Shown here: positions 5,513 to 62,639 of the stretch, piece after piece
Numbering within the stretch: position 1 is the stretch's first letter
Layout: every line of letters starts with the position of its first letter
Notes under the pieces: generated by a model
The model's input: only the letters and a program-made list of their open reading frames with translations
Databases searched by the model: none
What the model was told of the DNA's origin: nothing
Made by a program: the position numbers and the translations under genes
Virus record (IMG/VR): IMGVR_UViG_3300042473_001540
Span: 1 to 64,000 of that record
Strand: one strand, 5' to 3'
DNA: 64,000 nucleotides

Positions 5513-5714
5513 TTTTGACGACTATCAGCAAAGTCTACGGCGAGATAAACAGTTGATTGAAGATGTGAAAAGTGGCAAATTTGGGGTGCTCTTGCATGCT
5601 GCTGACATTGCCAACAGCAATACAGTGATGGTGAACTGTGGCACATTTGCACGCATGATCAGCATCATCTCACGACTTGACCCGAAAACCTACACATACC
5701 CCTGGGAACGATAA
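5487..5714 (+). CDS. Hypothetical protein
   Basis: ORF in operon. Confidence 0.55.
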   Translation: MGHYDEQRDFDDYQQSLRRDKQLIEDVKSGKFGVLLHAADIANSNTVMVNCGTFARMISIISRLDPKTYTYPWER

Positions 5715-5724
5715 GGAAATTTCA

Positions 5725-6282
5725 ATGGTTATGACTGCACGAGCCTACCGGCATTTACGCGATCTCATCTCGGAAAAAAGTTTGATTCAAGATCAAAACT
5801 TCACTCTCAGCAGTGGAGCAGCCAGCAACTACTTCTTCAACATGAAGATCTCCATGTTGGATCCCATGGGCAGCAATCTCATTGCTGATGCTATGCTGGA
5901 TATTCTCGATACATTGGATTTTGACAGCGTAGGAGGGATGGCTGTGGGCAGCGTTCCGTTGGTTACCAGCATTGCCACCAAAAGCTACCTACGCAGTCGC
6001 CATTATCCAGCTTTCTTTGTGCGAAAAGAAGTGAAAGATCACGGCGTGCAAACAAAGATTGATGGCCACTGCACTCCGGGTAGCCGAGTGGTGCTGGTGG
6101 AAGATGTGACTACTACTGGAGGCAGCATCATGCGGGCTGTTGAGGCTGTGCGGGAGATTGGTTGCCAAGTGGACACAGTGCTCACAGTCGTTGACCGACT
6201 GGAAGGTGCGCGAGAGAATCTATCAGCAGAAAAGATTCGCTTGATCCCCCTCTACACACGAGTTGATTTTGAGGATTCATAA
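5725..6282 (+). CDS. pyrE: Orotate phosphoribosyltransferase
   Basis: FTLSSG, RKEVKDHG, PRPP motif VLVEDVTTTGGS. Confidence 0.9.
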   Translation: MVMTARAYRHLRDLISEKSLIQDQNFTLSSGAASNYFFNMKISMLDPMGSNLIADAMLDILDTLDFDSVGGMAVGSVPLVTSIATKSYLRSRHYPAFFVRKEVKDHGVQTKIDGHCTPGSRVVLVEDVTTTGGSIMRAVEAVREIGCQVDTVLTVVDRLEGARENLSAEKIRLIPLYTRVDFEDS

Positions 6283-7020: not shown

Positions 7021-7080
7021 TTGACGTAATTGGGCATCTAGCCTATAAATATGACACAGGAAAAGGATAGACCTTTTCCT
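7021..7080 (+). promoter_or_regulatory. Sigma70/late promoter plus leader hairpin motif
   Basis: TTGACG-17-TATAAATA, then AGGAAAAGG-ATAGA-CCTTTTCCT. Confidence 0.7.
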
Positions 7081-7107
7081 TCACATACTGAACAAGGGAG
7101 ACTTGTT

Positions 7108-8517
7108 ATGTTCAATTACGATAGCGTCATTCTTGACGTCGACAGCTACAAATTCAGCCATCCGTGGCAACTTCCCCCAAACACCACACACATTCACAGC
7201 TACGTAGAAAGTCGCGGCGGACGCTTCCCTCGCACACTGTTTTACGGGCTCCAAATGTGGCTCAAGCGTCGGCTGGTGACTCCAGTGACCATGAGCGACG
7301 TGGACGAGGCTGCTGGATTGGCAGCCGCACACATGGTGCCTTTCCATCGGGAAGGCTGGGAATACATTGTGCGTGAGCACCAGGGCCGGTTGCCAGTAGA
7401 GATTCGAGCAGTGCCCGAAGGCATGGTGATCCCCACTCACAACGTGCTAGCCACTGTGGTGAACACCGATCCCAATGTGCCCTGGCTCACTAGCTTCCTA
7501 GAGACAGCTCTACTCCGTGCTGTTTGGTACCCCACCACAGTGGCCACACTCAGCTGGCATGCCAAGCAGACCATTCGAGCTGCACTGGGGAAGAGCAGCG
7601 ACAACCCCGAAGGCGAGCTTCTGTTTCGACTGCACGACTTTGGCGCTCGTGGCGTCAGCAGCGATGAAAGCGCTCAGCTGGGTGGCAGTGCTCACCTAGT
7701 GAACTTCCGAGGCACCGACACTGTTGCAGCCCTCCTTGCAGCCCGACGCTACTACACCGAGGCCATGGCAGGGTTTAGCATTCCGGCAGCAGAGCACAGC
7801 ACCATCACCAGTTGGGGTCGCGATGGCGAAGCTGAGGCCTATGGCAACATGCTCAAGCAGTTTGCCCGGCCAGGCAGCATCCTTGCAGTGGTGAGCGACA
7901 GCTACGACATCATGAACGCGGTCAACCACATCTGGGGCGAAACACTGCGAGACCGTGTGCTAGACAGTGGGGCCACCCTTGTGATTCGTCCCGACAGCGG
8001 TGATCCAGTTGTGGTGCCAGTTGATGTGGTTGAGGCACTTGGTGAGCGGTTTGGCTACACCGTCAACAGCAAGGGCTACAAGGTGCTGAACAAGAGTGTG
8101 CGTGTGATCCAGGGCGATGGCATGAACATTGACAGCATCAAAACCCTGTATGACAACCTCACAGCACGCGGCTGGAGTGCAGAAAACGTGGCTGTGGGCA
8201 TGGGCGGCCAACTCTTGCAAGGTATTACTCGCGACACCAATCGATTTGCGATGAAAGCTTCAGCTGCCTGTATTGATGGGGAATGGCGCGAGGTATATAA
8301 GGATCCTATTACAGACAAAGGAAAAACATCCAAGAAAGGTAAAGTTACCCTTTGGCAGTCAGGTAACCAATTTCAAACAAGCGTTAACACTCCTCTACGC
8401 GGTCTTGAGAATGGTGTGGTGTGGACCGACGTTCTGCAGACAGTCTACCGGAATGGACGCCTTCTCATTGATCAATCATTCCAGGACATTAGAGATCGAT
8501 CTGAGAAAGTCTTTTAA
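7108..8517 (+). CDS. nadV: Nicotinamide phosphoribosyltransferase (NAMPT)
   Basis: DSYKFSH, LHDFGARG, SIPAAEHS, VSDSYD, IRPDSGDP, IQGDG motifs. Confidence 0.95.
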   Translation: MFNYDSVILDVDSYKFSHPWQLPPNTTHIHSYVESRGGRFPRTLFYGLQMWLKRRLVTPVTMSDVDEAAGLAAAHMVPFHREGWEYIVREHQGRLPVEIRAVPEGMVIPTHNVLATVVNTDPNVPWLTSFLETALLRAVWYPTTVATLSWHAKQTIRAALGKSSDNPEGELLFRLHDFGARGVSSDESAQLGGSAHLVNFRGTDTVAALLAARRYYTEAMAGFSIPAAEHSTITSWGRDGEAEAYGNMLKQFARPGSILAVVSDSYDIMNAVNHIWGETLRDRVLDSGATLVIRPDSGDPVVVPVDVVEALGERFGYTVNSKGYKVLNKSVRVIQGDGMNIDSIKTLYDNLTARGWSAENVAVGMGGQLLQGITRDTNRFAMKASAACIDGEWREVYKDPITDKGKTSKKGKVTLWQSGNQFQTSVNTPLRGLENGVVWTDVLQTVYRNGRLLIDQSFQDIRDRSEKVF

Positions 8518-10008: not shown

Positions 10009-10536
10009 ATGAGCGATTTAAAAACACTTACTTGGGCAAATCACAAGCTTGCCGAAAGTACTCCTTTGATGGCTGCTATGCTTTCTGGAGATATAACACC
10101 TGAATGCTACTCTGATCTAGTGTACAGCAAACACTTGTTGTATTCTGTTATTGAAAGCAGACTTGCTTTTGAGTGTGCTGACTTGCCTCGAGCAGGCTGT
10201 GCGTTCCAGGACTGGAAAGAGATGGGGTCCCACAGTCCCACTTTACCTGCCAGTTTTTTTGAATTTCACGAGAGACTGGAAACTGTGTCTGAAAGCCAAT
10301 TGTGGGCGCATGTGTATGTGCACTACCTTGCCCCGCTCTATGGTGGTCAAATCTTGAAGAAGATTTTGAGCCCTCGTTTTCCGGTAAACATGCTGAGTTT
10401 TGAAACACCCAAAGCAGCTATTGCTGAGATTCGCTACAAAACACATGCTGGTTTGGCTGAAGAGGCCAATCTCAGCTTTGAGATGACAACAAGGTACTAT
10501 GACGAACTTCATCAATCTCATCAACCAAACGGCTGA
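10009..10536 (+). CDS. Heme oxygenase
   Basis: LKTLTWANHKLAE (heme-ligand His), AHVYVHYLAPLYGGQIL. Confidence 0.85.
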   Translation: MSDLKTLTWANHKLAESTPLMAAMLSGDITPECYSDLVYSKHLLYSVIESRLAFECADLPRAGCAFQDWKEMGSHSPTLPASFFEFHERLETVSESQLWAHVYVHYLAPLYGGQILKKILSPRFPVNMLSFETPKAAIAEIRYKTHAGLAEEANLSFEMTTRYYDELHQSHQPNG

Positions 10537-11125
10537 TAAATTTGAGCAGCTGATCCAAAACAACACCACTCTCTTGACGGAGATACCAACAGAGGATTTT
10601 GGTTGGACCAATAACCGATGGTATAGCCAACAGTTTCGGCTTGCTCATGTGGAAAGATTTCAGCAACCAAAATTCAGTGTGTTGCACACTGTGATCTTTC
10701 CTCACCTGACTGATCCCAGCCCTATTTTTGGGTTTGATATCATTGCCAGTGACACCAAGGCCACAGGTTTGTTTTTTGATTTCAGTCCCACTGTTGAAAG
10801 TTATGGAATCATATCTAGTCATCTATGGAGTGAGCCACGTGAAAGACCTGAATGGGGAACAATTTTCAGCGAGCATTGGATCGCTTGCAGACCCACATAT
10901 ACGGAAGCTGAAACCATCAGCACATTGGCATGCACACTGTTGGAACAATATCTATCTCAGTTGGGAACAAAAACCACAACAGATGTACCTATGGTCATAA
11001 AGAAGCAAAATCAATACAGTTTGAACCAAAGACAAAACACTCATACTACTAGAGTTCTCATGAAGATACTGGGAGAAGAGCGTGGCCAGTATTTTGTGGA
11101 AAATATTTTATTCCCAACCATATGA
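10499..11125 (+). CDS. Ferredoxin-dependent bilin reductase (PcyA/PcyX-like)
   Basis: VLHTVIFP, PIFGFDII, FDFSP, RERPEWGTIFS, QRQNTHT; overlaps heme oxygenase. Confidence 0.85.
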   Translation: MTNFINLINQTADKFEQLIQNNTTLLTEIPTEDFGWTNNRWYSQQFRLAHVERFQQPKFSVLHTVIFPHLTDPSPIFGFDIIASDTKATGLFFDFSPTVESYGIISSHLWSEPRERPEWGTIFSEHWIACRPTYTEAETISTLACTLLEQYLSQLGTKTTTDVPMVIKKQNQYSLNQRQNTHTTRVLMKILGEERGQYFVENILFPTI

Positions 11126-11181
11126 AGAATTGACACACCCTATACTTGTAGTATCTTTCAGACTGAAGCATGGAGTAGAGT

Positions 11182-12591
11182 ATGACACCCGCTACAACGA
11201 CAGCCAAAACTATTGAAAAATCCAGTGATATGGATGCAACCAAACTGTATCTCAAGCAGGTTGCCAAAAACAAGTTGCTTACACATCAGCAGGAAATTCA
11301 ATTTAGTCAACAAATTGAAAACAGCAAGAAAAACCTGCTCTTGAATCTGTTCTCTATTCCTATGGCAGTATGGCAGTTTGATACCAAGATTCAAGGTGTA
11401 GTAAAAGGGGAAATTGACAGCCACAGCATTTTTGACATTGAAGAAACAGAACTAGCCCCTCTGCTCACAAATCTAGCAAACATTCAACAGGATATTATGC
11501 TGTTAAGCACCAGCCCCAATAGTGAACTCTGTCAACGAGTGGCTGAAACCTGTTCTTCGCTGAGTTTCAAACTCAGCTTTTACGACAGCATGGTTCAGCC
11601 CTTCAACGACATGGTGAAAGACATTATTAGCGCACAAGGAGCTTACCTGCGCTTTGCACAAAGCAAAGGAGTCTCTCGTGAGTTGTTCCTAGCCGCATAC
11701 CAAAGCATGTCACAAGACAAAAATTGGCTGCGGTTCAAAACAGTTCACCAAGCCGAAGTGGAAAAGCATGAGTCGCAACTAGCAAGTTTTGTTGCCAACA
11801 CGGGTATGCCACTTGACACACTCCTTGAAAAATGCCGCCAGATTCGGCAAGAGCAAAAAAACAAGGACGAGGCAGTGGAGATTATGCTCAAGAGCAATCT
11901 TCGACTCGTGGTGAGTGTGGCAAAGAAATACACCAACATCAGTCAAACTCCCATTCTTGATCTCATTCAAGAAGGCAACATTGGTCTCTTGAAAGCTATT
12001 GAGAAGTTTGATTGGAAGATGGGATTTCGTTTCAGCACCTACGCCACTTGGTGGATCAAGCAGTGTGTGCTGAAAGCCTTGAATGAGCATCATCGTATCA
12101 TTCGTATCCCAGCTCACATGAGCGACCTTGCCAAGAAGGTAACGCGAGCACGAGCTGAGTTTGTAAATCACAATGGTTTTGAGCCCAGTGTGCAAGAAAT
12201 TGCAGAGATGCTGGAAATTGATGTGGAAAACGTAGACAAAGTCTACAGTGTTGCGCAGGGCACAATCTCTCTGGAAACGCCAATTGGCGGTGAAGAAGAT
12301 CAAACCATTGCACATCTTATTGAAGACACTGAAGGGGTGAATGCGTTTAACCTCTTGGCTGAGGCTGACAGCGCATATGCAGTGTCAGAGGTCTTGAAAC
12401 ATCTCAGTCCCAAGGAAGAGCGTGTGATCAGGATGCGCTTTGGTATTGGTGTAAACGAACAAAGCACACTGGAAGACATTGGCAACAAATTTGGTGTCAC
12501 TCGTGAGCGTGTGCGCCAGATTGAAAGCAAAGCACTGGAAAAGCTCAAGAGTACGGAACTAGCTCAGAAGCTGCAAGAAGCTTTTACCTAA
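11182..12591 (+). CDS. rpoD: RNA polymerase sigma70 factor (RpoD-like)
   Basis: NLRLVVSVAKKY, DLIQEGNIGLLKAIEKFD, FSTYATWWI, TRERVRQIE. Confidence 0.9.
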   Translation: MTPATTTAKTIEKSSDMDATKLYLKQVAKNKLLTHQQEIQFSQQIENSKKNLLLNLFSIPMAVWQFDTKIQGVVKGEIDSHSIFDIEETELAPLLTNLANIQQDIMLLSTSPNSELCQRVAETCSSLSFKLSFYDSMVQPFNDMVKDIISAQGAYLRFAQSKGVSRELFLAAYQSMSQDKNWLRFKTVHQAEVEKHESQLASFVANTGMPLDTLLEKCRQIRQEQKNKDEAVEIMLKSNLRLVVSVAKKYTNISQTPILDLIQEGNIGLLKAIEKFDWKMGFRFSTYATWWIKQCVLKALNEHHRIIRIPAHMSDLAKKVTRARAEFVNHNGFEPSVQEIAEMLEIDVENVDKVYSVAQGTISLETPIGGEEDQTIAHLIEDTEGVNAFNLLAEADSAYAVSEVLKHLSPKEERVIRMRFGIGVNEQSTLEDIGNKFGVTRERVRQIESKALEKLKSTELAQKLQEAFT

Positions 12592-12700: not shown

Positions 12701-12838
12701 CACTCGTGGGATCCCCCACCTTTGGTATTGGTCCACTGCTTCTTGCAGAAAGCTGACGATATTTCCTTCAAAATATAGAGTTGTTAAGCTTACGCCTGTT
12801 GCATACAGGCGCTATAATTTTTAGGAATGGGAAATCAA

Positions 12839-13513
12839 ATGATTCAATACATTGAAATACGCCAAGCTGAGGGCGGAGAAGACAGTCAACTGTTTGTTGA
12901 TGATTTGGCACGTGCCTATATTCGCATGGCCAGCAAGCTGGGTTGACTCACTACTGTAGTTAAAACGGTCCCAGGCTTCTGTGTTATCAAACTAGAGGGA
13001 CAAGATCTTTCACAGTGGGCACAAGAAGCAGGTGGGCATAGGATACAGAGGGTTCCACCAACTGAAAGACGTGGAAGAGTCCATACCAGTACAGTCACAG
13101 TAGCAGTGCTAGAGTATCCTTCAGAACAAGCCATTGAAATACTTGACAAAGATCTAGTAATAGAGTGGTTTTCTGGCACTGGTCCCGGTGGTCAAAATCG
13201 AAATAAGGTAATGGCCAGTTGTAGATTGCGACACACACCAACTGGGGTAGTCGTTACCGCCCAAACAAGAAGCAGAACCACTAGCTTTGCACAAGCTAGG
13301 CAGGAATTGGAGACACGACTTCAAAACAGGTTCAAGAGCCAAGCAGCCTCTCAAACCAGCCAAGAAAGAAAACATCAGGTTGGTAGCGGCCAGCGCGGAG
13401 ATAAAATACGCACTATCCAAATTCAACATGACTCAGCTGTGGACCATCGCACAGGCAAACGTTGCACTGCGGAAAGTTATCTCAAAGGCGAAATTTACAA
13501 GCTTTGGTTGTGA
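12839..13513 (+). CDS. RF1-like class I peptide release factor lacking domain 1, with in-frame TGA at 12944-12946
   Basis: IEIRQAEGGEDSQLF...KLG*...EAGGHRIQRVPPTERRGRVHTSTVTVAV, GPGGQNRNK, GSGQRGDKIRT all in one frame. Confidence 0.85.
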
Positions 13514-14472: not shown

Positions 14473-18564
<4,092 letters not shown>

Positions 18565-25024: not shown

Positions 25025-25133
25025 TTGCCATCGAGGTTGGAACAGCCTCCCAACACACCATGAGAATGGTAACTAGCCGGCAGCAATCACCTAGCTGGTG
25101 AAGAAATCCGGAAGTGGCATCCGGCGATGGCGA
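25025..25133 (+). ncRNA. Candidate multibranch RNA
   Basis: TTGCCATCG/CGATGGCGA closing stem with four internal hairpins. Confidence 0.45.
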
Positions 25134-29832: not shown

Positions 29833-30183
29833 ATGCCACTACGAGACGAGGACAAGAAGCTGTGGCAACAGGTGATGCAAGGGGTTAAGCCATTAACCAC
29901 TGCAACTCAAGTCCCCTTGCCTCAGTCTCTCCCAAAAACAAGTTCGTCATACCATAATCCCCTTCACACTTGGGATTTACATGGCATGACCTTGAGCGAA
30001 GCCTATCAAAGAACTATTGAACAAGTGTCAAACAAACATTTTCCCAGTCTAACCTTCATCACTGGCAAAAGTGGATTGATGCAACAGGAATTTTCACATT
30101 GGTTGGAGAAGAATCCAGCTGTGCAGCGTGTGGAAAGTTTGCCAGGTGGTGGGGCCTTCCGGGTGTATCTCAAGAAAAAATAA
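29833..30183 (+). CDS. Smr-domain protein
   Basis: DLHGMT, ITGKSG, GGGAFRVYL. Confidence 0.85.
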   Translation: MPLRDEDKKLWQQVMQGVKPLTTATQVPLPQSLPKTSSSYHNPLHTWDLHGMTLSEAYQRTIEQVSNKHFPSLTFITGKSGLMQQEFSHWLEKNPAVQRVESLPGGGAFRVYLKKK

Positions 30184-32316: not shown

Positions 32317-32922
32317 TTACCATCTTGCATTATCCTCAAATCCAGCATCTTCTAGTTCTTTTTGACAATCAAACATGGCACGTTTGCCTTGTCCTGCGTA
32401 TTTGTTCAAGATTGTTTCAACAGTCGTGTGATTCATTGCTGACCGCAACGAGATACTTTTGGCTGCCAAACAACGGAGCAGTGGAAGAGTAGGCGTGTAA
32501 GGTATAGCCAAGTAATTGAGCTCTGAAGGCATACCTTGGAGTGAGGTTAATGGGTTGAGGTGACAACTAAAAAGATCACCAACACTGCTGGGAGCACCTT
32601 CCAGTGAAGTCAGTTGGTTGTTGAAGCATACGAAACTTCCAACCACATTCTTGGGTGCAGCTTTAAGTGAAATAAGTTGGTTACTTGAGCCTAAGAAACT
32701 TCCACCAACACTCTCTGGCGCCCCGTCCAGTGTGGTTAGTTGGTTGTAATCGCACTGGAAGTGTCCAAGAACACTCTTGAAACGCACAGGGAACTGGGGT
32801 AATTGTCTTTTAAGTATAACATTACCCTGGCAAGTGATCAACCCCTCAGGATCTATTGTGACTTGGCCTGTTGTTTTGAAATTAGCTTTCAACAAAGCCA
32901 TTACTTCTTTTTTGTCTACCAT
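32317..32922 (-). CDS. LRR-like cassette protein 9
   Basis: LRR-like repeats plus conserved C-terminal block. Confidence 0.85.
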   Translation of the reverse strand: MVDKKEVMALLKANFKTTGQVTIDPEGLITCQGNVILKRQLPQFPVRFKSVLGHFQCDYNQLTTLDGAPESVGGSFLGSSNQLISLKAAPKNVVGSFVCFNNQLTSLEGAPSSVGDLFSCHLNPLTSLQGMPSELNYLAIPYTPTLPLLRCLAAKSISLRSAMNHTTVETILNKYAGQGKRAMFDCQKELEDAGFEDNARW

Positions 32923-33668
32923 CTTGCATTCCCTTCAAATCCAGCATCTTCCAGTTCTTTTTGGCAGTCAAACATGGCACGTTTGCCTTGACCCATATAC
33001 TTTTGCAGAATAGCCCGCACCTCGTGTGGCCATCCCATACCCGACCACAGTTTTTTAGCATTTAAACAACGCAAGAGCGGCAGAGTGGGGCTGTAGTCAA
33101 TCCATAAAACCCTTACTTCAGTAGGCATTCCTTCAAGTGACTCTAGCTGATTACCCCATGCTCTCAACTCGCCAGTGATGGTTTTTGGTGCACCGTGTAG
33201 TGAGACTAGTTTGTTTTCCATGCAAAACAAATCATGCACTTTCTCAGGAACATGTTCCAGTGATGAGAGTTGATTTGTCATACAAGAGAAATTGGCACCA
33301 ACTGATTTGGGACAGTGTTCAAGGCTTTCTATGTTGTTATTATCGCATTTGAAATCTCCGCCCACATGTTGAGGCGAACCCAACAAACTGGTGAGTTGGT
33401 TGTGGCCACACTTGAAATCTCTACCTACCCAAGAGGGTGCGCCTTCTAGACTCACCAGATCGGTATGCTGTACAGCAAAATCGTAGCGTATTTTTCCAAA
33501 CCTTACCCGCAAGGTTTTTATACCTGGCTTACCATCAAGGTAAGATTTCTCCTTGCTCTTGACACTGCCTGTGCAGGATATCAATCCTGTGTTGGGATCA
33601 ACAGAGAGTTTACCTGTGTGAGAGTAATATTTGTCAAAAGTTTTTTTGATCCCGGCTAGATCTACCAT
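32916..33668 (-). CDS. LRR-like cassette protein 8
   Basis: Same; 7-nt ATGGTAG start/stop overlap. Confidence 0.85.
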   Translation of the reverse strand: MVDLAGIKKTFDKYYSHTGKLSVDPNTGLISCTGSVKSKEKSYLDGKPGIKTLRVRFGKIRYDFAVQHTDLVSLEGAPSWVGRDFKCGHNQLTSLLGSPQHVGGDFKCDNNNIESLEHCPKSVGANFSCMTNQLSSLEHVPEKVHDLFCMENKLVSLHGAPKTITGELRAWGNQLESLEGMPTEVRVLWIDYSPTLPLLRCLNAKKLWSGMGWPHEVRAILQKYMGQGKRAMFDCQKELEDAGFEGNARW

Positions 33669-34279
33669 CGTGCATTTCCTTCAAATCCAGAGTCTTCCAA
33701 ATCTTTTTGGCAGTCAAACATGGCAGCTTTGCCTTGACCTGCATATTTGTTCATGATTTCTTGAACCTTCTGGGGTGGCTCCGATTCATCAACCCTATGC
33801 ATGAATACAATTTTTTTGGCAACCAATGCACGTAGCAAAGGCAAAGTGGGCGAATATTGTAACACTAGTCGCCCTAAACCTTCTTGCGGTATGCCTTCAA
33901 GACTTTCAAGTGGATTGCCCACACAACTCAAAGATCCAAGAACTTTTTTGGGTGCACCTTGCAAGCTCTTGAGCTGGTTGAACCCACATAAGTAGTGTTC
34001 GCCAACAGCATCAGGACCGCCTTCAAGAGTTTGTAAATTGTTCTCAGTACAACGAAATTCATTGTAGACATATTTGGGAGATCCTTGAAGGCTTGTGAGC
34101 CCCATGCCCCCCACATCAAATCCTTCCACTTCATAAAAGCCAACTGGCAACTTCTTAACATGCAACATAAGCGTTACGTAACCTTTTGTGCTTATTGTTC
34201 CATCAGAATTGATTACAATGCTTTCATTACATTGAAAATAATCATCAAAAGTTTTTTTGATGTTATCAACGTCTACCAT
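33662..34279 (-). CDS. LRR-like cassette protein 7
   Basis: Same. Confidence 0.85.
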   Translation of the reverse strand: MVDVDNIKKTFDDYFQCNESIVINSDGTISTKGYVTLMLHVKKLPVGFYEVEGFDVGGMGLTSLQGSPKYVYNEFRCTENNLQTLEGGPDAVGEHYLCGFNQLKSLQGAPKKVLGSLSCVGNPLESLEGIPQEGLGRLVLQYSPTLPLLRALVAKKIVFMHRVDESEPPQKVQEIMNKYAGQGKAAMFDCQKDLEDSGFEGNARW

Positions 34280-34911
34280 TTTGCATGATCCTCAAATCCA
34301 GCGTCTTCCAAATCTTTTTGGCAATCAAACATGGCACGTTTGCCTTGGCCAGCATATTTGTTCAAAATTGTCTGCACTTTTCCCTTCTCCACAGTGTGAG
34401 TGTCGTCAGCAGGCTCTAAAAATATATGCCTTGCTGCCAAGGTACGTAAGAGAGGCAAATGTGGTAGATACGGTAACCAAGCTGCATTTTCCACTTTCAA
34501 CGGAAATCCATCCAAGCTTTTCAACGGATTACCAATGCAATTGAAATTATTGGGTATCTGGACAGGTGCCCCCTTCAAATCAACAAGTTGATTATGGTCA
34601 CAGTAGTAGTTCCAACCTACAATTTCTGGCCCCCCACTAAGGCTTTTGAGCATGTTACGTGAACAGTCAAAACTCACGCCCACTTCAGGGGGACAGCCTT
34701 CCAAGGTTACTAGTGCGTTCTCATCTAACGATAGATTTTCAGTTACAGCTTTGAAGGCAACTGGCAGTTTTTCAAAACGTGTATAGTGGAGATTCAACAA
34801 TTGAATATCGCCATTTACTGTTACCAGTCCATCTGATGAAACTTTTGCACTGTTGTAGTCAAAGCTGAAATGGTCTTTCAATAACTGCAAGATTTCTCGT
34901 TTGTTTACCAT
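34273..34911 (-). CDS. LRR-like cassette protein 6
   Basis: Same. Confidence 0.85.
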   Translation of the reverse strand: MVNKREILQLLKDHFSFDYNSAKVSSDGLVTVNGDIQLLNLHYTRFEKLPVAFKAVTENLSLDENALVTLEGCPPEVGVSFDCSRNMLKSLSGGPEIVGWNYYCDHNQLVDLKGAPVQIPNNFNCIGNPLKSLDGFPLKVENAAWLPYLPHLPLLRTLAARHIFLEPADDTHTVEKGKVQTILNKYAGQGKRAMFDCQKDLEDAGFEDHAKW

Positions 34912-35564
34912 CTGGCGTTGTCCTCAAATCCGGCATCTTCCAATTCTTTTTGACAATCAAACATAACACGTTTTCCTTGCCCCAAATATTTTTCCAAAAT
35001 GTATAACACCTTCCAGGCATCGCTGCCCTCGCTTTGATACGGCCAAAAAATAATCTCTGGTGCCACCAATGTGCGCAACAAAGGCAGCTGAGTATCATAA
35101 GTGATATACAAACTATCTCCAATTTTTTGAGGAAAGCCCTGCAAGCTCTCTAGAGGATTGGCTGAACAATTGAACACACTGGGGATTTCTCTAGGTGCCC
35201 CTTCCAAATCCTTCAATTGATTTTTACTGCAATTATAACTGCCGCCAAATGTGGGTGTTTGTGTCGTGCCTATTGTTTTGGGTCCAAACTTCAAACTTTT
35301 GAGTTCATTATTGTCACACTCAAAATTCTTACCAACAGTTTCTGGACAACCCTCTAGTGTCTTGAGTTGGTTGATGCTGAGCATCATACTGCCTTCAATG
35401 TGAGAAAATTTCACCGGTAGTTCTTGAAAAGAACTGTGAAATTTGTTGTATAACACAACGTCTCCCATGACACTGACTTTGCCAGCTGGATCAACAATGG
35501 GGTCCCCATCTACCATGAAATGTTGAGTTAGCGTGTTCAACACATGCTGTTTGACGTCTACCAT
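34905..35564 (-). CDS. LRR-like cassette protein 5
   Basis: Same. Confidence 0.85.
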   Translation of the reverse strand: MVDVKQHVLNTLTQHFMVDGDPIVDPAGKVSVMGDVVLYNKFHSSFQELPVKFSHIEGSMMLSINQLKTLEGCPETVGKNFECDNNELKSLKFGPKTIGTTQTPTFGGSYNCSKNQLKDLEGAPREIPSVFNCSANPLESLQGFPQKIGDSLYITYDTQLPLLRTLVAPEIIFWPYQSEGSDAWKVLYILEKYLGQGKRVMFDCQKELEDAGFEDNARW

Positions 35565-36163
35565 CTTGCATTTCCTTCAAAGCCCGCATCTTCCAGTTCT
35601 TTTTGGCAATCAAACAGGGCACGTTTGCCTTGTCCTGCGTATTTGTAAAATATTCCTTCAATTGTTAGAAGTTTGCTTTGCATAACATTGTGGGCATACA
35701 GCATTAGGCCCTGTTGGCAGTTCAAAGCTCGAAGCAAGGGCAATTTATTGTGATAATTTATGCTCAAGTGTTGGCCTACTCGTTGGGGAAACCCAGCAAG
35801 ACTCAACACTGGAACCTCTTGTCTAAATCCCACACGACCTGAAACCTCAAGGGGCCCACCTGTCATGTCTTTCAAAGGATTTTTGTTGGCAGTGAATCTG
35901 CCTCCCACAATCTGCGGACAACCTTCAAGACTGGAGAGTCCACATCTGTCTAAAATCAAACTGGCATGGCAAACGCCAAATTTTACAGGCAGTTTTCCAT
36001 TGGGAAACGGTCCTTGTATGGCCAAGAGCACACCATATCCTGGTGTGATCTCCTGCACATTTACTATACCACTATCTTCAATTTGAAAGCGCACCCGGTT
36101 GTCTGCCTCACCATTACGAAAATAAGTGTTCAACATGTGCTGAACTTCTTGTTTGTCTACCAT
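35558..36163 (-). CDS. LRR-like cassette protein 4
   Basis: Same. Confidence 0.85.
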   Translation of the reverse strand: MVDKQEVQHMLNTYFRNGEADNRVRFQIEDSGIVNVQEITPGYGVLLAIQGPFPNGKLPVKFGVCHASLILDRCGLSSLEGCPQIVGGRFTANKNPLKDMTGGPLEVSGRVGFRQEVPVLSLAGFPQRVGQHLSINYHNKLPLLRALNCQQGLMLYAHNVMQSKLLTIEGIFYKYAGQGKRALFDCQKELEDAGFEGNARW

Positions 36164-36756
36164 CTTGCATTTCCTTCAAATCCAGCATCCTCTAGATCTT
36201 TTTGACATTCAAACAGGGCACGCTTGCCCTGTCCTTTGTATTTTTCAATTATTTCTTCAATGGGATTAGTGTTAAAGGATGATGAGCTCAATATTACACC
36301 ATCTTGGCAAGCTAACGTGCGCAGCAGCGGCAACTTGTCATGGTAAGGCAGTTTAGCATAGTCACCCACCCTATCAGGAAAACCATCCAAACTCTCTAAT
36401 AGGTTTTTCTGCATCCCAAGCCAAAACCTACCTGTGACTTCTTTGGGCCCACCCTTGAAATTTTTCAATTGATTGCCAAGTGCAACAAAATTGCCTTGGA
36501 TTACAGGGGGACAACCAACCAAGTCCACGATTTGATTCCGGTCCAATTTTAAGCTGGCTTTGAACAAGCCAAATCTCACAGGCAACTGACCTCCAGGGAA
36601 GGGTTTGTCCTTAATAGTGCGGAGATGGCCGCGACCAGGAGTCAGCTCAAGCACATTAACCAAGCCCTCAGGACCTATGTCAAATTTCACAGCGTCATTT
36701 GGCTCAAAGAAAAAATACTCTGCCAACAGTTCCAAAATTTCCCTTTTGTCTACCAT
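36157..36756 (-). CDS. LRR-like cassette protein 3
   Basis: Same. Confidence 0.85.
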   Translation of the reverse strand: MVDKREILELLAEYFFFEPNDAVKFDIGPEGLVNVLELTPGRGHLRTIKDKPFPGGQLPVRFGLFKASLKLDRNQIVDLVGCPPVIQGNFVALGNQLKNFKGGPKEVTGRFWLGMQKNLLESLDGFPDRVGDYAKLPYHDKLPLLRTLACQDGVILSSSSFNTNPIEEIIEKYKGQGKRALFECQKDLEDAGFEGNARW

Positions 36757-37571
36757 TTGGCGTTCCTTTCAAATCCTGCGTCTTCCAATTCTTTTTGACA
36801 GTCAAACAGGGCTCGTTTGCCCTGGCCTGCGTATTTTTTCAAGATGGTTTCCACTTGAATATACTTGCCCCACAGCACAGGCCAAAAATTGACCTTCTGG
36901 GCTACCAAAAGCCGTAACAAGGGCAAATCGGATTTGTAACTGACTTCAATCAAATCAGGAGTTTGGGAGCCTAACCCCTCAAGATTTTCCAAGGGATTGT
37001 GATCAAAAATAAACTGCTTGGAAATATTCAAAGAGGCACCTTTGAGTGTTGTGAGCTTGTTGTTGGTTGCCCAAAAATATTCCACGGTCTGTGGTGCGTC
37101 TTGAAGATCAGTCAAGAGATTTTTACTGACATCAAACATACCACCTATTTGCAGGGGAGCACCTCGCAAACTCACTAAATTGTTGTTGTATGCAATGTAT
37201 TCTTGTGTAAAGTCTCGTGGACTTCCCAACAAATCTGAGAGTTTATTATTCTGGCAAGAATATTGTCCTTTTACTGTTTTTGGGCCACCAACCAAGCTGA
37301 TCAACTGGTTTTCACTGCAATCAAATGTGTCCAAGACAGTGTGAGGACAGCCTTCAAGTGTTTCCAACTTGTTCCTGTGACAGAGAAAATTGCCTTCCAC
37401 CACTCCAAATCTCACAGGCAATCGAGAGGTCTCTTTGCTCAACAAAATTGATCCATGAGCATCTACAACACCTGTATCATGTATAGTGAAAAGGGTACTT
37501 TCCCAACCAAAGTATTCATTCAGTAACTGACGAACAGTTGTTTTGTCTTGTGGGAATTCCTGGTTTACCAT
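36750..37571 (-). CDS. LRR-like cassette protein 2
   Basis: Same; longest member. Confidence 0.85.
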   Translation of the reverse strand: MVNQEFPQDKTTVRQLLNEYFGWESTLFTIHDTGVVDAHGSILLSKETSRLPVRFGVVEGNFLCHRNKLETLEGCPHTVLDTFDCSENQLISLVGGPKTVKGQYSCQNNKLSDLLGSPRDFTQEYIAYNNNLVSLRGAPLQIGGMFDVSKNLLTDLQDAPQTVEYFWATNNKLTTLKGASLNISKQFIFDHNPLENLEGLGSQTPDLIEVSYKSDLPLLRLLVAQKVNFWPVLWGKYIQVETILKKYAGQGKRALFDCQKELEDAGFERNAKW

Positions 37572-38221
37572 CGTGCATTTTCCTCAAAACCCGCATCTTC
37601 CAATTCTTTTTGGCAGTCAAACAAAGCACGTTTGCCTTTGCCTGCATAACTGTTCAAAATTTTATGTAACTGCTGGAATTTTCCTTCGTTTCCTCGCTTA
37701 TATTGCATAGGCACAATAAGGTCCACATGCAAGGCTCCTAATGTTCTCAACAGTGGTATTGTGGGACTATACGTCAATGTTACCCAAGCAATGCTCTTGG
37801 GCAAGTGGTCAAGTGACTCCAGTGGGTTGTCTTGAATCTCCAGATTGTCAGATACTGTGTCCGGCAAACCTTGTAGAGAAGTCAACTTGTTGCTATTGAG
37901 AAGGATACTGCCACTGACCCAATGCGGAAAACTGGTTAACTTTGATAGCAAGTTGAAGCTGGCGTCGAAATCTCCTTCAATCTCAAATGGGCATCCTTCC
38001 AAGGTTCTTAGATTCTTGTTGTTGCAGGTGAAGGTACCATGCACCTTACTGAAACGCAAAGGTAACTGAGATTGAGGCCGCGTTAGGTGTAAGTCACCAG
38101 CCACAACAATCTTACCATCTTGATCAAACATCCAACCAGCTGGATATAAGGCATTGCTCTCTATCTTGAAGTTCTGGCTCAAGATGGTTTTGGTTTGTTC
38201 ATATTCCACATCACTTACCAT
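37565..38221 (-). CDS. LRR-like cassette protein 1
   Basis: Same. Confidence 0.85.
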   Translation of the reverse strand: MVSDVEYEQTKTILSQNFKIESNALYPAGWMFDQDGKIVVAGDLHLTRPQSQLPLRFSKVHGTFTCNNKNLRTLEGCPFEIEGDFDASFNLLSKLTSFPHWVSGSILLNSNKLTSLQGLPDTVSDNLEIQDNPLESLDHLPKSIAWVTLTYSPTIPLLRTLGALHVDLIVPMQYKRGNEGKFQQLHKILNSYAGKGKRALFDCQKELEDAGFEENARW

Positions 38222-40124: not shown

Positions 40125-40248
40125 GGATCCGTGGTCTAATTGGATAAGGCAAGAGCCTTCCGGTCCCGCAGGTAGCATTCAAGGTTCGAATCCTTGGGGA
40201 CCGCTCCTAAGCTCTTCGATGGGGGTTCGAATCCCTCCGGGTCCGCCA
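40125..40248 (+). tRNA. tRNA-Arg (probably TCT) with 47-nt tRNA-mimic insertion in anticodon
   Basis: GGATCCG/CGGGTCC-GCCA; AGAGC/GCTCT stem; two TTCGAAT T arms. Confidence 0.8.
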
Positions 40249-43926: not shown

Positions 43927-44727
43927 ATGCATTGGATTATTCAGGACAACCTGCTCAATGAGCGCAACTATAGCAGCCTTCTGGAAGCTCTAGTTCGTCT
44001 TCAAATCCCTCATGACATTGTCAAGGTGATTCCGTTCACAAGTGGGTTGCCATGGGAAGAGCGAATTACTCCCCTGGTAGACCCTCAAGGACACGTGATG
44101 GTGAGTGGGAGCATCAGCCTGGCTACACTGGCTACTGATCGTGGTTGGACCCCAGGCAGCTTTCACAATGAGAACCATGACTTTCAAGTGTGGCGTGAAC
44201 ACATGAAAGGTCATCTCCTCAATGAGGAGGCAGTGGTGTGCAAGTTTGGTGATGTGCCCCATTTGTGGGATCGCTTTTTTATCCGACCCACAGAAGACAC
44301 CAAGAGCTTCAACGGGCAGATAATAGACTGGCAGGCGTTCCTATCTTGGCAACGTAAGGTGATTGGATTGCGTGAGACCTATACTACTCTTGATGAGAAC
44401 ACTCCAGTTGTGGTGAGTGAACTCAAACAGATATATCGGGAGGCCCGATTTTTTGTAGTAGATGGAGAAGTCATCACAGGCAGCACCTACAAGATTGGAA
44501 GCCGCGTTTGTCCAACAGCAGAAGTGCCACCCACAATGTGGGAATATGCTCAACGCATGGCTGGAAAGTGGGGACCAGCTCGAGCCTATGTGATTGACCT
44601 GGCTCTTACTGACGATGCTGATGATGGATACAACAAGATTATTGAATACAACTGCTGCAATTGTGCAGGGTTTTATGAGATTGATGTGCAGAAATGGATT
44701 ATGGCCATTGAAAACATGGAGTTTTAG
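43927..44727 (+). CDS. ATP-grasp domain protein (DUF4343-like)
   Basis: FIRPTEDTKSFNG, EARFFVVDG, YVIDLA, IIEYN. Confidence 0.7.
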   Translation: MHWIIQDNLLNERNYSSLLEALVRLQIPHDIVKVIPFTSGLPWEERITPLVDPQGHVMVSGSISLATLATDRGWTPGSFHNENHDFQVWREHMKGHLLNEEAVVCKFGDVPHLWDRFFIRPTEDTKSFNGQIIDWQAFLSWQRKVIGLRETYTTLDENTPVVVSELKQIYREARFFVVDGEVITGSTYKIGSRVCPTAEVPPTMWEYAQRMAGKWGPARAYVIDLALTDDADDGYNKIIEYNCCNCAGFYEIDVQKWIMAIENMEF

Positions 44728-45336
44728 GTGTTCAAGTTGCTGGCCAAGTTGCCTCGAGAACTGGGGGTAGCGTGTAGCGGTGGTGTAGACAGCATGGCGG
44801 TGCTGGATTTTTTGCGCCTCCGGCACAACGTCACTGTGTGTTTTTTTCATCATGACACCGAAACAAGTTCAAAAGCGTTGAGCTTTCTCAGCACATACTG
44901 TTATGAGAACTCCATTCCCATGCGAGTGGATTTTTTGGTTGATGCGTGCCCCAAAGGGGTTTCAATGGAAGAACATTGGCGCAACAGTCGATATGAGTTT
45001 TTGCACAGCATCGAAGGAGTTGTGGTAACAGGGCATCATCTAGATGATTGTGTGGAGACCTATCTCTTCAACTGTTTGCATGGGAAAACACACACCATTC
45101 CCATGTGGCGGAACAATGTGGTGCGACCCTTTCTCACCACACCCAAGAGTGTGTTTGAAAGTTGGTGTGTGAGACATGAGGTGCCTTGGGTTGAGGATGA
45201 GAGCAATAAAGATTTGAAGTATATGCGGAATCACATTCGTCATAAGATTGTACCGGAGGCACTCAAGGTCAATCCAGGCTTGAGGAAGGTGGTCAAGCGG
45301 CTGGTTCTTCAAAGCATGCAAACAGAAAATAGTTGA
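44728..45336 (+). CDS. tilS: tRNA(Ile)-lysidine synthetase (catalytic domain only)
   Basis: SGGVDS PP-loop, GHHLDDCVET, VRPFL, EDESN, RNHIRH. Confidence 0.9.
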   Translation: MFKLLAKLPRELGVACSGGVDSMAVLDFLRLRHNVTVCFFHHDTETSSKALSFLSTYCYENSIPMRVDFLVDACPKGVSMEEHWRNSRYEFLHSIEGVVVTGHHLDDCVETYLFNCLHGKTHTIPMWRNNVVRPFLTTPKSVFESWCVRHEVPWVEDESNKDLKYMRNHIRHKIVPEALKVNPGLRKVVKRLVLQSMQTENS

Positions 45337-47192: not shown

Positions 47193-47266
47193 GGCCCCAT
47201 AAGACAAAGGTAGTCAGCTGGACTCTAAATCCAGTGGTGTGAGTTCAAATCTCACTGGTGCCACCA
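47193..47266 (+). tRNA. Amber suppressor tRNA (CTA)
   Basis: CTGGA-CTCTAAA-TCCAG; TTCAAAT; ACCA; own TTGACG-17-TATACA promoter. Confidence 0.85.

Positions 47267-51356: not shown

Positions 51357-53024
<1,668 letters not shown>

Positions 53025-60395: not shown

Positions 60396-62638
<2,243 letters not shown>

Positions 62639-62639
<1 letters not shown>

What the first reader, a model, noticed from the sequence alone, without database searches (positions are those of the whole stretch)
12839..13513. RF1-like release factor gated by an in-frame UGA at a conserved Trp
Seen: the ORF track shows only 13106-13513, but RF homology starts at ATG 12839 and continues in the same frame through GGT-TGA-CTC (codon 36). 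The PxT (PPT) and GGQ motifs are intact and domain 1 is absent. Established: this position aligns with the Trp of RF1 (YxRYAxxxxW); PxT factors read UAA/UAG; UGA is read only by RF2; UGA-C is a leaky context; prfB autoregulation uses a +1 shift instead. Inference: full-length protein appears only on UGA readthrough, so the gene senses low RF2 activity and supplies a backup termination or rescue factor.
Basis: partly seen in the sequence, partly recalled or inferred. Interest (0 to 1): 0.8.

Follow-up and report, generated by a model that had tools for sequence, protein, structure and literature searches.

The report
Stop-codon-gated short release factor gene
A lake jumbo phage carries a shortened RF1-type release-factor gene that can only be made in full by reading through a conserved internal UGA; hundreds of phages share this gate, and bacterial relatives replace it with a prfB-style +1 frameshift, which I could not find described in print.

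Summary
ATG 12839 opens a 35-codon piece that matches RF1 residues ~107-139. GGT-TGA-CTC follows at 12944-12946, and the same frame continues for 188 codons with PPT and GGQ intact. There is no domain 1.

The TGA is present in every independent assembly examined. It is also present in 70 of 70 distinct relatives from IMG/VR (49-61% identity), never as TGG, TAA or TAG. dN/dS is 0.09 before the TGA and 0.17 after it. The "Trp" versions in protein databases are TGA codons that gene callers translated with code 4.

TGA is an ordinary terminator in this phage. No tRNA(UCA) was found, and no conserved restart codon follows the gate.

Bacterial relatives of the same short RF1-like family carry, at the same spot, CTT-TGA (39 loci) or CTT-TAG (8 loci) with the rest of the gene in the +1 frame, often behind a GGAGG-like stretch. 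That is the prfB cassette. Other members place the stop elsewhere. Only one ungated member turned up.

Best reading: synthesis is gated by termination efficiency at a weak stop, probably with Trp inserted by tRNA-Trp. The product would be an RF1-type termination or rescue factor that lacks the RF3/stalk-binding domain. The gate is strongly supported. The sensing role and the protein's function remain inference. I found no published description.

The parts
12793..12838 (+). Upstream untranslated region: terminator-like or operator-like hairpin (12793-12811) overlapping TATAAT, then AGGA...ATG. There is no coding continuity with anything upstream.
   Evidence: in-frame stops upstream are shown.
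12839..12943 (+). N piece, 35 codons: start of RF1 domain 2 (strand plus helix alpha5) with the AEGGEDS motif (12866-12886), which in RF1 contacts the first base of the stop codon.
   Evidence: Always 35 codons in 63 of 70 relatives. dN/dS 0.09 and 70% mean amino-acid identity.
12944..12946 (+). Gate: in-frame TGA (context GGT TGA C) at the position of the conserved RF1 Trp.
   Evidence: TGA in 70 of 70 relatives. Kept in independent assemblies.
12947..13510 (+). C piece, 188 codons: rest of domains 2/4 with QRVPPTE (13046-13066) and VHTS (13079-13090), domain 3 with GGQ (13187-13195), and GSGQRGDK (13382-13405).
   Evidence: dN/dS 0.17. A family model superposes on ribosome-bound RF1 at TM 0.85.
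13511..13513 (+). True terminator, TGA in this copy; 67 of 70 relatives use TAA.

Best explanation
The locus is one gene for a shortened RF1-type class-I release factor (domains 2, 3 and 4; no domain 1). Its synthesis is gated by a programmed in-frame UGA at codon 36.

Most ribosomes should terminate there through host RF2 and release a 35-residue peptide. A fraction decode UGA, most likely with near-cognate tRNA-Trp(CCA). That would restore the ancestral Trp and allow the 224-residue factor to be completed.

The yield depends on the competition between RF2 and tRNA at a weak stop. The gate therefore couples production of the factor to termination capacity, the same logic as the prfB frameshift. 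Bacterial members of the family implement it with a genuine prfB-type +1 cassette.

Shown: the gate, its conservation, translation of both pieces in one frame, and the equivalent frameshift gate in relatives.

Inferred: Trp insertion, responsiveness to RF2 level, and the activity of the product. I expect the product to be a UAA/UAG-type peptide-release or rescue factor that works without the RF3/L7-L12-binding domain. In many phages it is part of a tRNA / tmRNA / RNA-repair module.
For: Gate and coding:
- TGA in 70 of 70 relatives, never TGG, TAA or TAG.
- dN/dS 0.09 and 0.17; third-position entropy 1.43 against 0.47-0.68 at the other positions.
- syntenic relatives keep 35 codons plus GGT TGA CTN.
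- the database 'W' forms are really TGA.

Not a code change:
- TGA ends 18 of 74 window ORFs.
- other same-frame ORF pairs are separate genes.
- no anticodon TCA among the 18 window tRNAs or the ~200 tRNAs in relatives' loci.

Not reinitiation:
- the first in-frame start codon lies a median of 36 codons downstream, and in 29 of 68 genes it is beyond PPT.

Sensor logic:
- 47 of 47 cellular relatives have CTT + TGA/TAG with the C piece in the +1 frame, and 30 of 47 have an SD-like stretch 3 nt upstream.
- other members place the gate at other positions.
- L092, nested in the phage clade, regained TGG but acquired a CTT TAG shift site.
- TAA is never the gate.
- T never follows the gate (0 of 70, against 4 of 18 true TGA terminators; p=0.0013).
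- extra synonymous constraint and a covarying helix just 3' of the UGA in the main phage subclade.

Protein:
- RF1-type motifs and fold.

Context:
-.
Against: - No direct evidence of readthrough, of the inserted residue, or of any activity.
- By its motifs the factor should read UAA/UAG, so making it when RF2 is short does not obviously compensate at UGA.
- Eight relatives are gated by TAG, so the gate is not a dedicated RF2 sensor across the family.
- One relative (L167) has no gate, so gating is not indispensable.
- The window's lineage lacks the 3' sequence constraint seen in the main subclade, and its local fold is not significant (z -1.4).
- Only 64 kb of a 310-kb genome was visible, so a tRNA(UCA) elsewhere cannot be excluded.
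- The window copy is not next to the RNA-repair genes seen in other phages.
Confidence: 0.62

Rival explanations
1. The gate is a constitutive attenuator. The internal stop only keeps the dose of a potentially toxic release factor very low, at a fixed few per cent readthrough or frameshift, and does not respond to release-factor levels.
For: Over-expressed RFs are harmful (PMC12421855, read). Gates of different kinds and positions, and both TGA and TAG, would all serve as throttles. One member has lost the gate.
Against: A weak promoter or RBS would achieve the same result more simply. Bacterial relatives keep the complete prfB cassette (CTT, stop, C/G, SD-like stretch at a 3-nt spacing), and the efficiency of that cassette is known to depend on RF level. 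TAA, the tightest stop, is never used.
Confidence: 0.2
2. Timed code switch. A phage-encoded opal suppressor tRNA (anticodon UCA), located outside the window, decodes the TGA late in infection, as in TGA-recoded phages. The RF1-like factor would then be part of a code-change programme.
For: TGA-recoded phages carry RF1 and suppressor tRNAs (Borges et al. preprint, read). The window holds 18 tRNAs including an amber-suppressor-like tRNA(CTA). Only 64 of 310 kb was seen.
Against: TGA is a normal terminator here (18 of 74 ORFs) and no other gene needs it read. No TCA anticodon occurs among the 18 window tRNAs or the ~200 tRNAs in 41 related loci. Published code-change modules are written in the standard code. 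The frameshift-gated bacterial relatives cannot work this way.
Confidence: 0.08
3. Split protein. The 35-residue N peptide and a separately initiated C protein are made as two chains and assemble.
For: Gene callers report two ORFs.
Against: There is no conserved start codon after the gate: median distance 36 codons, an ATG within 10 codons in 1 of 68 genes, and in the window none before 13106, which is beyond the PPT motif. Yet the stretch in between is under purifying selection. The frameshift-type relatives have no restart either.
Confidence: 0.03
4. Decaying pseudogene or sequencing error.
For: An in-frame stop is the usual mark of a pseudogene.
Against: The gene is identical in independent assemblies. 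TGA is kept in 70 of 70 diverged homologs, with dN/dS of 0.09 and 0.17 and no other stop in any C piece.
Confidence: 0.01
5. Selenocysteine insertion at the UGA.
For: UGA followed by a downstream helix in the main subclade.
Against: The position is a conserved Trp in RF1. The helix closes a 26-nt variable coding loop, unlike a SECIS. No SECIS family reached its Rfam gathering score in the window. The +1 frameshift and TAG-gated relatives argue for termination-coupled recoding.
Confidence: 0.02

Closest known systems
prfB (RF2) autoregulatory +1 programmed frameshift
   Same: A class-I release-factor gene interrupted by a premature stop, whose bypass depends on slow termination. Bacterial relatives of this gene use the same cassette (SD-like stretch, 3-nt spacer, CTT, TGA, C).
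   Different: The window gene stays in frame, so it needs readthrough, not a shift. The gate lies in domain 2 at codon 36 of a protein without domain 1, not at codon 26 of domain 1. The factor is RF1-type by its motifs while the gate is mostly UGA, so this is cross-regulation and not proven autoregulation. TAG gates occur here, whereas none was found among 8,164 prfB genes (PMC12421855).
Mimivirus/Megavirus eRF1 homologue (R726/mg280), made through a UGA-C readthrough plus a CUU-UAG/UAA-C frameshift (Jeudy et al. 2012, PMC3521657)
   Same: A virus-encoded release factor gated by a conserved UGA that is probably read as Trp, with CUU-stop-C shifty sites in the same gene family.
   Different: Those are eukaryotic/archaeal-type eRF1 proteins of amoeba viruses, with both events in one gene. 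Here the factor is a bacterial RF1-type protein of phages and bacteria, with one event per gene.
PrfH (RFH), partner of RtcB2
   Same: A class-I RF paralogue without domain 1 that keeps a codon-recognition-like domain and GGQ, and is linked to repair of a damaged translation apparatus.
   Different: The window protein scores 52 bits against the PrfH model (cut-off 167) and groups with RF1. It keeps RF1 decoding motifs, has no rtcB neighbour, and is recoded, which PrfH is not.
Phage RF1 in 'code-change modules' of TGA-recoded (code 4) phages (Borges et al.)
   Same: A phage-borne RF1-type gene associated with tRNA genes.
   Different: Those phages carry in-frame TGA in many late genes and a tRNA(UCA), and their RF1 is written in the standard code. 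Here the phage uses the standard code, and the RF gene is the only gene in the window that contains an internal TGA.
Q-beta A1 read-through protein (leaky UGA read by tRNA-Trp; from my own knowledge)
   Same: Programmed low-level decoding of UGA by near-cognate tRNA-Trp in a bacterial virus.
   Different: Q-beta makes a C-terminally extended second product. Here the short product is probably inert, and only the read-through product is a complete protein.

Membership tests
Canonical RF1 (prfA) | Full four-domain architecture with N-terminal domain 1 | tested here: not met
   Homology starts at RF1 residue ~107; stops and hairpins lie upstream; the model covers domains 2-4 only.
Canonical RF1 (prfA) | Reaches the NCBIfam prfA equivalog cut-off | tested here: not met
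   154 bits for the C piece and 184 bits for a full-length family member, against cut-offs of 400 and 423.
Canonical RF1 (prfA) | PxT tripeptide, the Q and H-T recognition residues, and GGQ | tested here: met
   QRVPPTE...VHTS and GPGGQ are present and family-wide. The middle residue is Pro; in the solved RF1 aligned it is Val.
Canonical RF1 (prfA) | UAA/UAG-specific peptide release | not testable with these tools
   Needs in vitro release assays.
PrfH (RFH) | Reaches the TIGR03072 cut-off | tested here: not met
   52 bits against a cut-off of 167; relatives score 39-84 bits; PrfH structures are not among the top 50 fold matches.
PrfH (RFH) | Operon with the RtcB ligase | tested here: not met
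   Neighbours are sigma-70 and small ORFs. There is no conserved partner in 47 bacterial loci. Phage neighbours are phosphatase, phosphoesterase, kinase and HD proteins.
ArfB / ICT1 | GGQ domain plus a basic C-terminal tail, with no codon-recognition domain | tested here: not met
   25 bits against a cut-off of 100, and domains 2/4 are present.
Recoding-gated release-factor genes (prfB type) | Conserved premature stop inside the RF coding sequence | tested here: met
   TGA in 70 of 70 phage relatives; TGA or TAG in 47 of 47 frameshift-type relatives.
Recoding-gated release-factor genes (prfB type) | +1 shift on CUU-U with an upstream SD-like stimulator | tested here: not met
   The window gene continues in frame 0. 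The feature is met only in bacterial relatives.
Recoding-gated release-factor genes (prfB type) | The gate stop is the one read by the encoded factor (autoregulation) | tested here: inconclusive
   The motifs predict UAA/UAG reading while the gate is UGA. TAG-gated relatives exist. The motifs do not covary with the gate.
Programmed stop-codon readthrough genes | Conserved leaky stop with purifying selection on the downstream in-frame sequence and no restart | tested here: met
Programmed stop-codon readthrough genes | Read-through product demonstrated | not testable with these tools
   Needs a reporter assay, western blot or mass spectrometry.
Code-4 (TGA=Trp) phage code-change module | Many genes with in-frame TGA, plus a tRNA(UCA) | tested here: not met
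   The remaining 246 kb of the genome was not visible.

The most novel reading that the evidence does not exclude
This would be a previously unrecognised third lineage of bacterial-type class-I release factors. It is RF1-derived, lacks domain 1 and has a PPT motif. Its synthesis is almost always controlled by stop-codon recoding: UGA readthrough in hundreds of large phages, and a prfB-like +1 frameshift on UGA or UAG in Myxococcota, Planctomycetota and other bacteria. It would act as a termination-stress-induced release or rescue factor. Phages would deploy it alongside tRNAs, tmRNA and RNA-repair enzymes to keep ribosomes running when host termination or decoding is failing or under attack. 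It would also be the first natural bacterial-type case of the long-hypothesised release-factor gene regulated by readthrough of its own internal stop.
Probability: 0.45. Interest if true: 0.9.

Novelty: new variant of a known kind. Interest (0 to 1): 0.85.

Why it matters
Regulation of a release-factor gene by a premature stop is a textbook case, but it is known only for prfB, by frameshift. The readthrough version was proposed decades ago, and a 2016 review still described it as unknown for RF2 and RF1 genes (PMC5009743). A 2025 survey of more than 12,000 genomes concluded that prfA is not recoded (PMC12421855).

Here a whole RF1-derived family uses both solutions, readthrough and +1 frameshift, at the same codon. 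That gives a natural comparison of the two mechanisms and a new candidate termination or rescue factor.

In practical terms:
- Annotation pipelines split or truncate these genes. They call them at about 135-190 aa, or mistranslate them with code 4.
- The 35-codon leader plus UGA is a compact candidate sensor of termination capacity.
- The gene adds a component to the translation toolkit of jumbo phages.

Tried and rejected
- **Whole-window recoding.** ORF coverage under the alternative codes was uninformative. The stop-usage and extension test showed the standard code. Four same-frame ORF pairs proved to be separate genes.
- **'W' forms as evidence for TGG.** Rejected; the DNA has TGA.
- **PrfH/RtcB idea.** I first suspected this from the missing domain 1. 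It was rejected: the upstream gene is sigma-70 and the PrfH score is low.
- **Covariation between decoding motifs and gate identity.** None found.
- **Conserved partner gene in bacteria.** None found.
- **Known phage genomes.** No nucleotide match in the phage collection. The protein matches there are ordinary RF genes or contaminants.
- **Special tRNA-Trp.** All eight examined have a normal CCA anticodon loop. Four of the eight have T11:A24, which is only a lead.
- **Fold of the window's own gate region.** Not significant.
- **A first regular expression with the wrong spacing** produced nonsense. It was corrected.
- **Literature.** Eight searches and ten papers read; no description of the family was found. 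Subscription-only papers are not in the library.

Full report
**1. The observation**

The sequence is as described. ATG 12839 opens a frame that reads 35 codons and meets TGA at 12944-12946 (GGT TGA CTC). It then continues for 188 codons to the terminator at 13511-13513.

The mechanical ORF list begins only at GTG 13106. The 53 codons after the gate include QRVPPTE (13046-13066). They therefore have no in-frame ATG, GTG or TTG from which they could be started.

- The 35-residue N piece matches Pfam PCRF and the NCBIfam prfA models at positions ~107-136.
- The C piece matches the end of PCRF plus the RF-1 domain, best to prfA (154 bits), then prfB (88), PrfH (52) and ArfB (25). All of these are far below their cut-offs.
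- Against solved structures, the N piece aligns to T. thermophilus RF1 residues 109-139.
- A family member aligns end to end with T. maritima RF1, with the gate opposite the Trp of '…ERKGW'.
- Upstream of the ATG there are in-frame stops and terminator-like hairpins, so no domain 1 is encoded.

**2. The TGA is neither an error nor a recent mutation**

The window is the first 64 kb of a 309,756-bp IMG/VR contig. Three other IMG/VR assemblies carry the identical gene, TGA included.

The stretch is held by at least 20 lake-water metagenome runs from 2020-2024. Contigs of four runs from different samples carry it with 0-2 differences, none at the gate.

Three syntenic relatives from other samples share the order heme oxygenase, bilin reductase, sigma-70, then this gene. 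At 75-83% protein identity they keep exactly 35 codons, GGT TGA CTN and a 675-nt gene. Substitutions are concentrated at third codon positions on both sides, for example 3/2/18 in the N piece and 31/15/91 in the C piece.

**3. The gate is a family trait**

A pattern search of IMG/VR, built only from C-piece motifs, found 419 relatives. The 80 fetched loci, together with the four, gave 70 distinct gene sequences at 49-61% identity to the window.

- All 70 have TGA at the aligned position. None has TGG, TAA or TAG.
- 63 have an N piece of exactly 35 codons.
- No C piece contains another stop.
- The gene's own terminator is TAA in 67 of 70.

Over 57 unsaturated pairs, dN/dS is 0.09 for the N piece and 0.17 for the C piece. 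Mean pairwise identity is 70% and 62%. Nucleotide entropy in the N piece is 0.68, 0.47 and 1.43 at codon positions 1, 2 and 3.

The protein database holds 222-237-residue 'Trp' versions, all on contigs of 1-4 kb. For the two I checked, the DNA has TGA, so the gene callers had used code 4.

**4. Alternatives to readthrough**

- *Code 4.* TGA ends 18 of the 74 ORFs called in the window, with short in-frame extensions. The four long same-frame pairs are unrelated genes.
- *Opal suppressor tRNA.* None of the 18 window tRNAs, and none of the ~200 tRNAs in 41 related loci, has anticodon TCA. The other 246 kb of this genome could not be read.
- *Reinitiation.* The first in-frame start codon after the gate lies a median of 36 codons downstream (range 4-148). 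In 29 of 68 genes it is beyond PPT. An ATG occurs within 10 codons in only 1 of 68.
- *Frameshift or hop.* The frame does not change, and the gate aligns with a residue of RF1.
- *Selenocysteine.* No SECIS family reached its Rfam gathering score in the window, and the ancestral residue at this position is Trp.

**5. The unexpected part: relatives in cellular genomes**

The same C-piece patterns found 86 relatives in the GTDB species genomes, of which 80 were fetched. They fall into classes.

(a) Full-length RF1 genes with TGG or another sense codon and a long N-terminal extension (CPR bacteria, Armatimonadota, Planctomycetota). The twelve TGG genes form one clade (100/99).

(b) In-frame TGA at the same position as in the phages (Rhodovibrio, Thalassospira, Sphingomonas, Sphingobium and two MAG contigs).

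(c) 47 distinct loci, mainly Myxococcota (Nannocystis, Polyangiaceae, Archangium, Pyxidicoccus), also Pirellulaceae, Acidobacteriota, Lentisphaerota and several Proteobacteria.
- The N piece ends CTT plus a stop, and the C piece continues in the +1 frame.
- CTT is present in 47 of 47.
- The stop is TGA in 39, TAG in 8 and TAA in none.
- The next base is C in 36, G in 10 and T in 1.
- 30 of the 47 have an SD-like stretch (GGAGG, GGGAG, GGGGG and similar) upstream of the CTT, ending 3 nt before it in most.
- This is the architecture of the prfB +1 frameshift site as described in PMC3711429 and PMC12421855.

(d) In-frame TGA about 15 codons further downstream (L111, L118, L137, L151), and +1 sites at other nearby positions (L092, L166).

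L092 (Hahella) is nested within the phage clade. It has TGG restored at the Trp codon but carries a CTT TAG +1 site five codons later.

On the tree, the phage in-frame-TGA type forms one clade (100/99). TGA and TAG gates have interchanged at least four times.

Two loci (L104, L128) have extra frame breaks and are unresolved. Among 120 database proteins related to the Nannocystis gene, only one carries both pieces in one chain, and its DNA is genuinely uninterrupted (L167). The gate is therefore near-universal in the short family but not absolute.

NCBI labels these genes 'peptide chain release factor-like protein' or 'PCRF domain-containing protein' and calls them at about 190 residues, without the N piece. 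NCBIfam has no model for the family.

**6. Signals around the phage gate**

- The codon before the gate is Gly (GGN) in 68 of 70.
- The base after it is A in 50, C in 10, G in 10 and T in 0. True TGA terminators in the window have T at that position in 4 of 18 (Fisher p=0.0013). The next codon is also constrained by the protein, which weakens this comparison.
- In the main phage subclade (32 representatives below 85% nucleotide identity), the seven codons after the gate show synonymous codon identity of 0.815 against a mean of 0.467. This is the highest of 175 windows. The consensus is GGC UGA ACU ACC CGC CUG AU.
- An 11-pair interrupted helix starts 12 nt after the UGA. It is 90% paired (33-45% when partners are slid), and seven pairs show changes on both sides. 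No shuffle in 500 reaches the observed covariation score.

I treat the helix as tentative, because the structure was derived from these same related sequences. The window's lineage has a different 3' sequence, and its local fold is not significant.

**7. The protein**

An AlphaFold model of a family member has mean pLDDT 86. It superposes best on ribosome-bound RF1 (TM 0.85, rmsd 2.6-3.0 Å, 32-34% identity). RF2 matches less well, and PrfH is not among the top 50 matches.

The elements that in RF1 read the stop codon and hydrolyse peptidyl-tRNA are conserved across the family, whichever stop gates the gene. These are GG-x-[DE] at the start of helix alpha5, Q-R-[VI]-P-P-T-E, H-[TS]-S and GGQ. 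That assignment of roles is from my own knowledge of the RF1-ribosome structures.

The N piece contains the first of these elements, so a protein lacking it should not decode. The expected specificity is therefore UAA/UAG. The invariant Pro in PPT is a family signature whose effect is unknown.

**8. Context**

33 of the 41 scanned phage loci have tRNA or tmRNA genes within 4 kb. A tmRNA lies close downstream of the gene in five of them.

Recurrent same-strand neighbours:
- a DSP/PTP-like phosphatase (39 loci);
- a calcineurin-like phosphoesterase (33);
- an AAA_33, polynucleotide-kinase-like protein (15);
- an HD_4 protein (13).

This resembles the RNA-repair and ribosome-rescue modules described for jumbo phages (PMC7824862). 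It also fits the idea that domain-1-less RF paralogues serve in conflicts over the translation apparatus (PMC6514570).

The window copy is not in such a module. It sits after sigma-70 and before small ORFs. Bacterial frameshift-type genes have no conserved partner.

**9. How it most likely works**

*Shown:*
- One gene.
- Both pieces are translated in one frame.
- A conserved UGA separates them.
- TGA otherwise terminates in this phage.
- Relatives replace the UGA by a prfB-type shift site.

*Inferred:*
- RF2 terminates most ribosomes at codon 36.
- Near-cognate tRNA-Trp, the classical reader of leaky UGA, carries a fraction through and restores the ancestral Trp.
- The fraction rises when termination is slow.
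- The gate has been invented repeatedly in different forms and places within one family, and the tightest stop (TAA) is never used. This argues that what is selected is coupling to termination efficiency, not the identity of one residue.
- What the factor then does remains open. The possibilities are ordinary UAA/UAG termination when host factors run down, or release on stalled or damaged complexes.
- A UAA/UAG reader made when RF2 is short is not an obvious compensation. This is the weakest link in the account.

**10. Comparison with what is known**

The closest systems are the following:
- prfB: the same logic and, in the relatives, the same cassette.
- The Mimivirus/Megavirus eRF1 gene, with a UGA-C readthrough plus a CUU-stop-C shift.
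- PrfH: the same loss of domain 1, but a different family and a different partner.
- RF1 genes of TGA-recoded phages: a different situation.

[quoted passage not shown] The 2025 prfB survey found no programmed frameshift in prfA. The GeneTack survey, the release-factor evolution survey, the huge-phage paper and the jumbo-phage overview do not mention this family.

Within the limits of the library searched, the family and its recoding appear to be undescribed. I file it as a new variant of a known kind: recoding-gated release-factor genes.

Noticed in passing
window 47193-47266 (also L029 8031-8107): A tRNA with anticodon CTA, amber-suppressor-like (ARAGORN calls it tRNA-Pyl; Rfam tRNA at 58.5 bits), with an encoded CCA end. 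TAG still ends 22 of 74 window ORFs, so the phage is not obviously TAG-recoded. An amber suppressor and an RF1-type factor in one genome would work against each other at UAG.
   Followed up: partly
L015, L029, L038, L040, L049 (downstream of the RF gene); L072 (upstream): tmRNA genes lie beside the gated RF1-like gene in several related phages. In two of them they start within a few bases of its stop codon.
   Followed up: partly
L067 1397-1984, L055 1061-1690, L082 1103-1618, L021 6864-7421 and their homologues in 13-39 phage loci: Recurrent same-strand neighbours of the gene in other phages: a DSP/PTP-like phosphatase, a calcineurin-like phosphoesterase (phrog_547), an AAA_33 polynucleotide-kinase-like protein and an HD_4 protein. 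Together they look like an RNA-repair set. They are absent next to the window copy.
   Followed up: partly
window 29833-30183 and 44728-45336: An Smr-domain ORF (the family of ribosome-collision nucleases) and a PP-loop ORF of the family that includes TilS. The PP-loop ORF follows an R2K ATP-grasp ORF (43927-44727) in the same frame, across a TAG. These are further translation-related genes in the window.
   Followed up: no
window 10009-12591; L168-L170: Heme oxygenase, an overlapping ferredoxin-dependent bilin reductase and a 469-residue sigma-70 factor lie directly upstream. The order is conserved in three relatives from other samples. NAMPT (7051-8517) and a phosphoribosyltransferase (5677-6282) lie further upstream.
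   Followed up: partly
window 32317-38221, minus strand: A run of about ten back-to-back ORFs of 199-273 residues, each overlapping the next by a few bases. They look like a tandem paralogue array.
   Followed up: no
window 14473-18555 (-), 51357-53015 (-), 60402-62639 (+): Three large proteins with collagen triple-helix repeats; one is 1,360 residues long.
   Followed up: no
window 25026-25132 and 40125-40245: Rfam finds a skipping-rope RNA (RF02924, 44.5 bits). It also finds a 121-nt tRNA match that ARAGORN did not report, possibly a tRNA with an insertion.
   Followed up: no
L030, L041, L047, L057 (two copies), L065, L069, L083: Phage tRNA-Trp(CCA) genes lie near the gated gene. Four of the eight have T11:A24 in the D stem, the pair created by the Hirsh UGA-suppressor mutation. 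No baseline frequency was determined.
   Followed up: partly
L020-L084, main phage subclade: gate +1 to +66: Unusually strong synonymous constraint in the seven codons after the UGA, and a covarying 11-pair helix starting 12 nt downstream. The role is unexplained, and neither feature is seen in the window's own lineage.
   Followed up: partly
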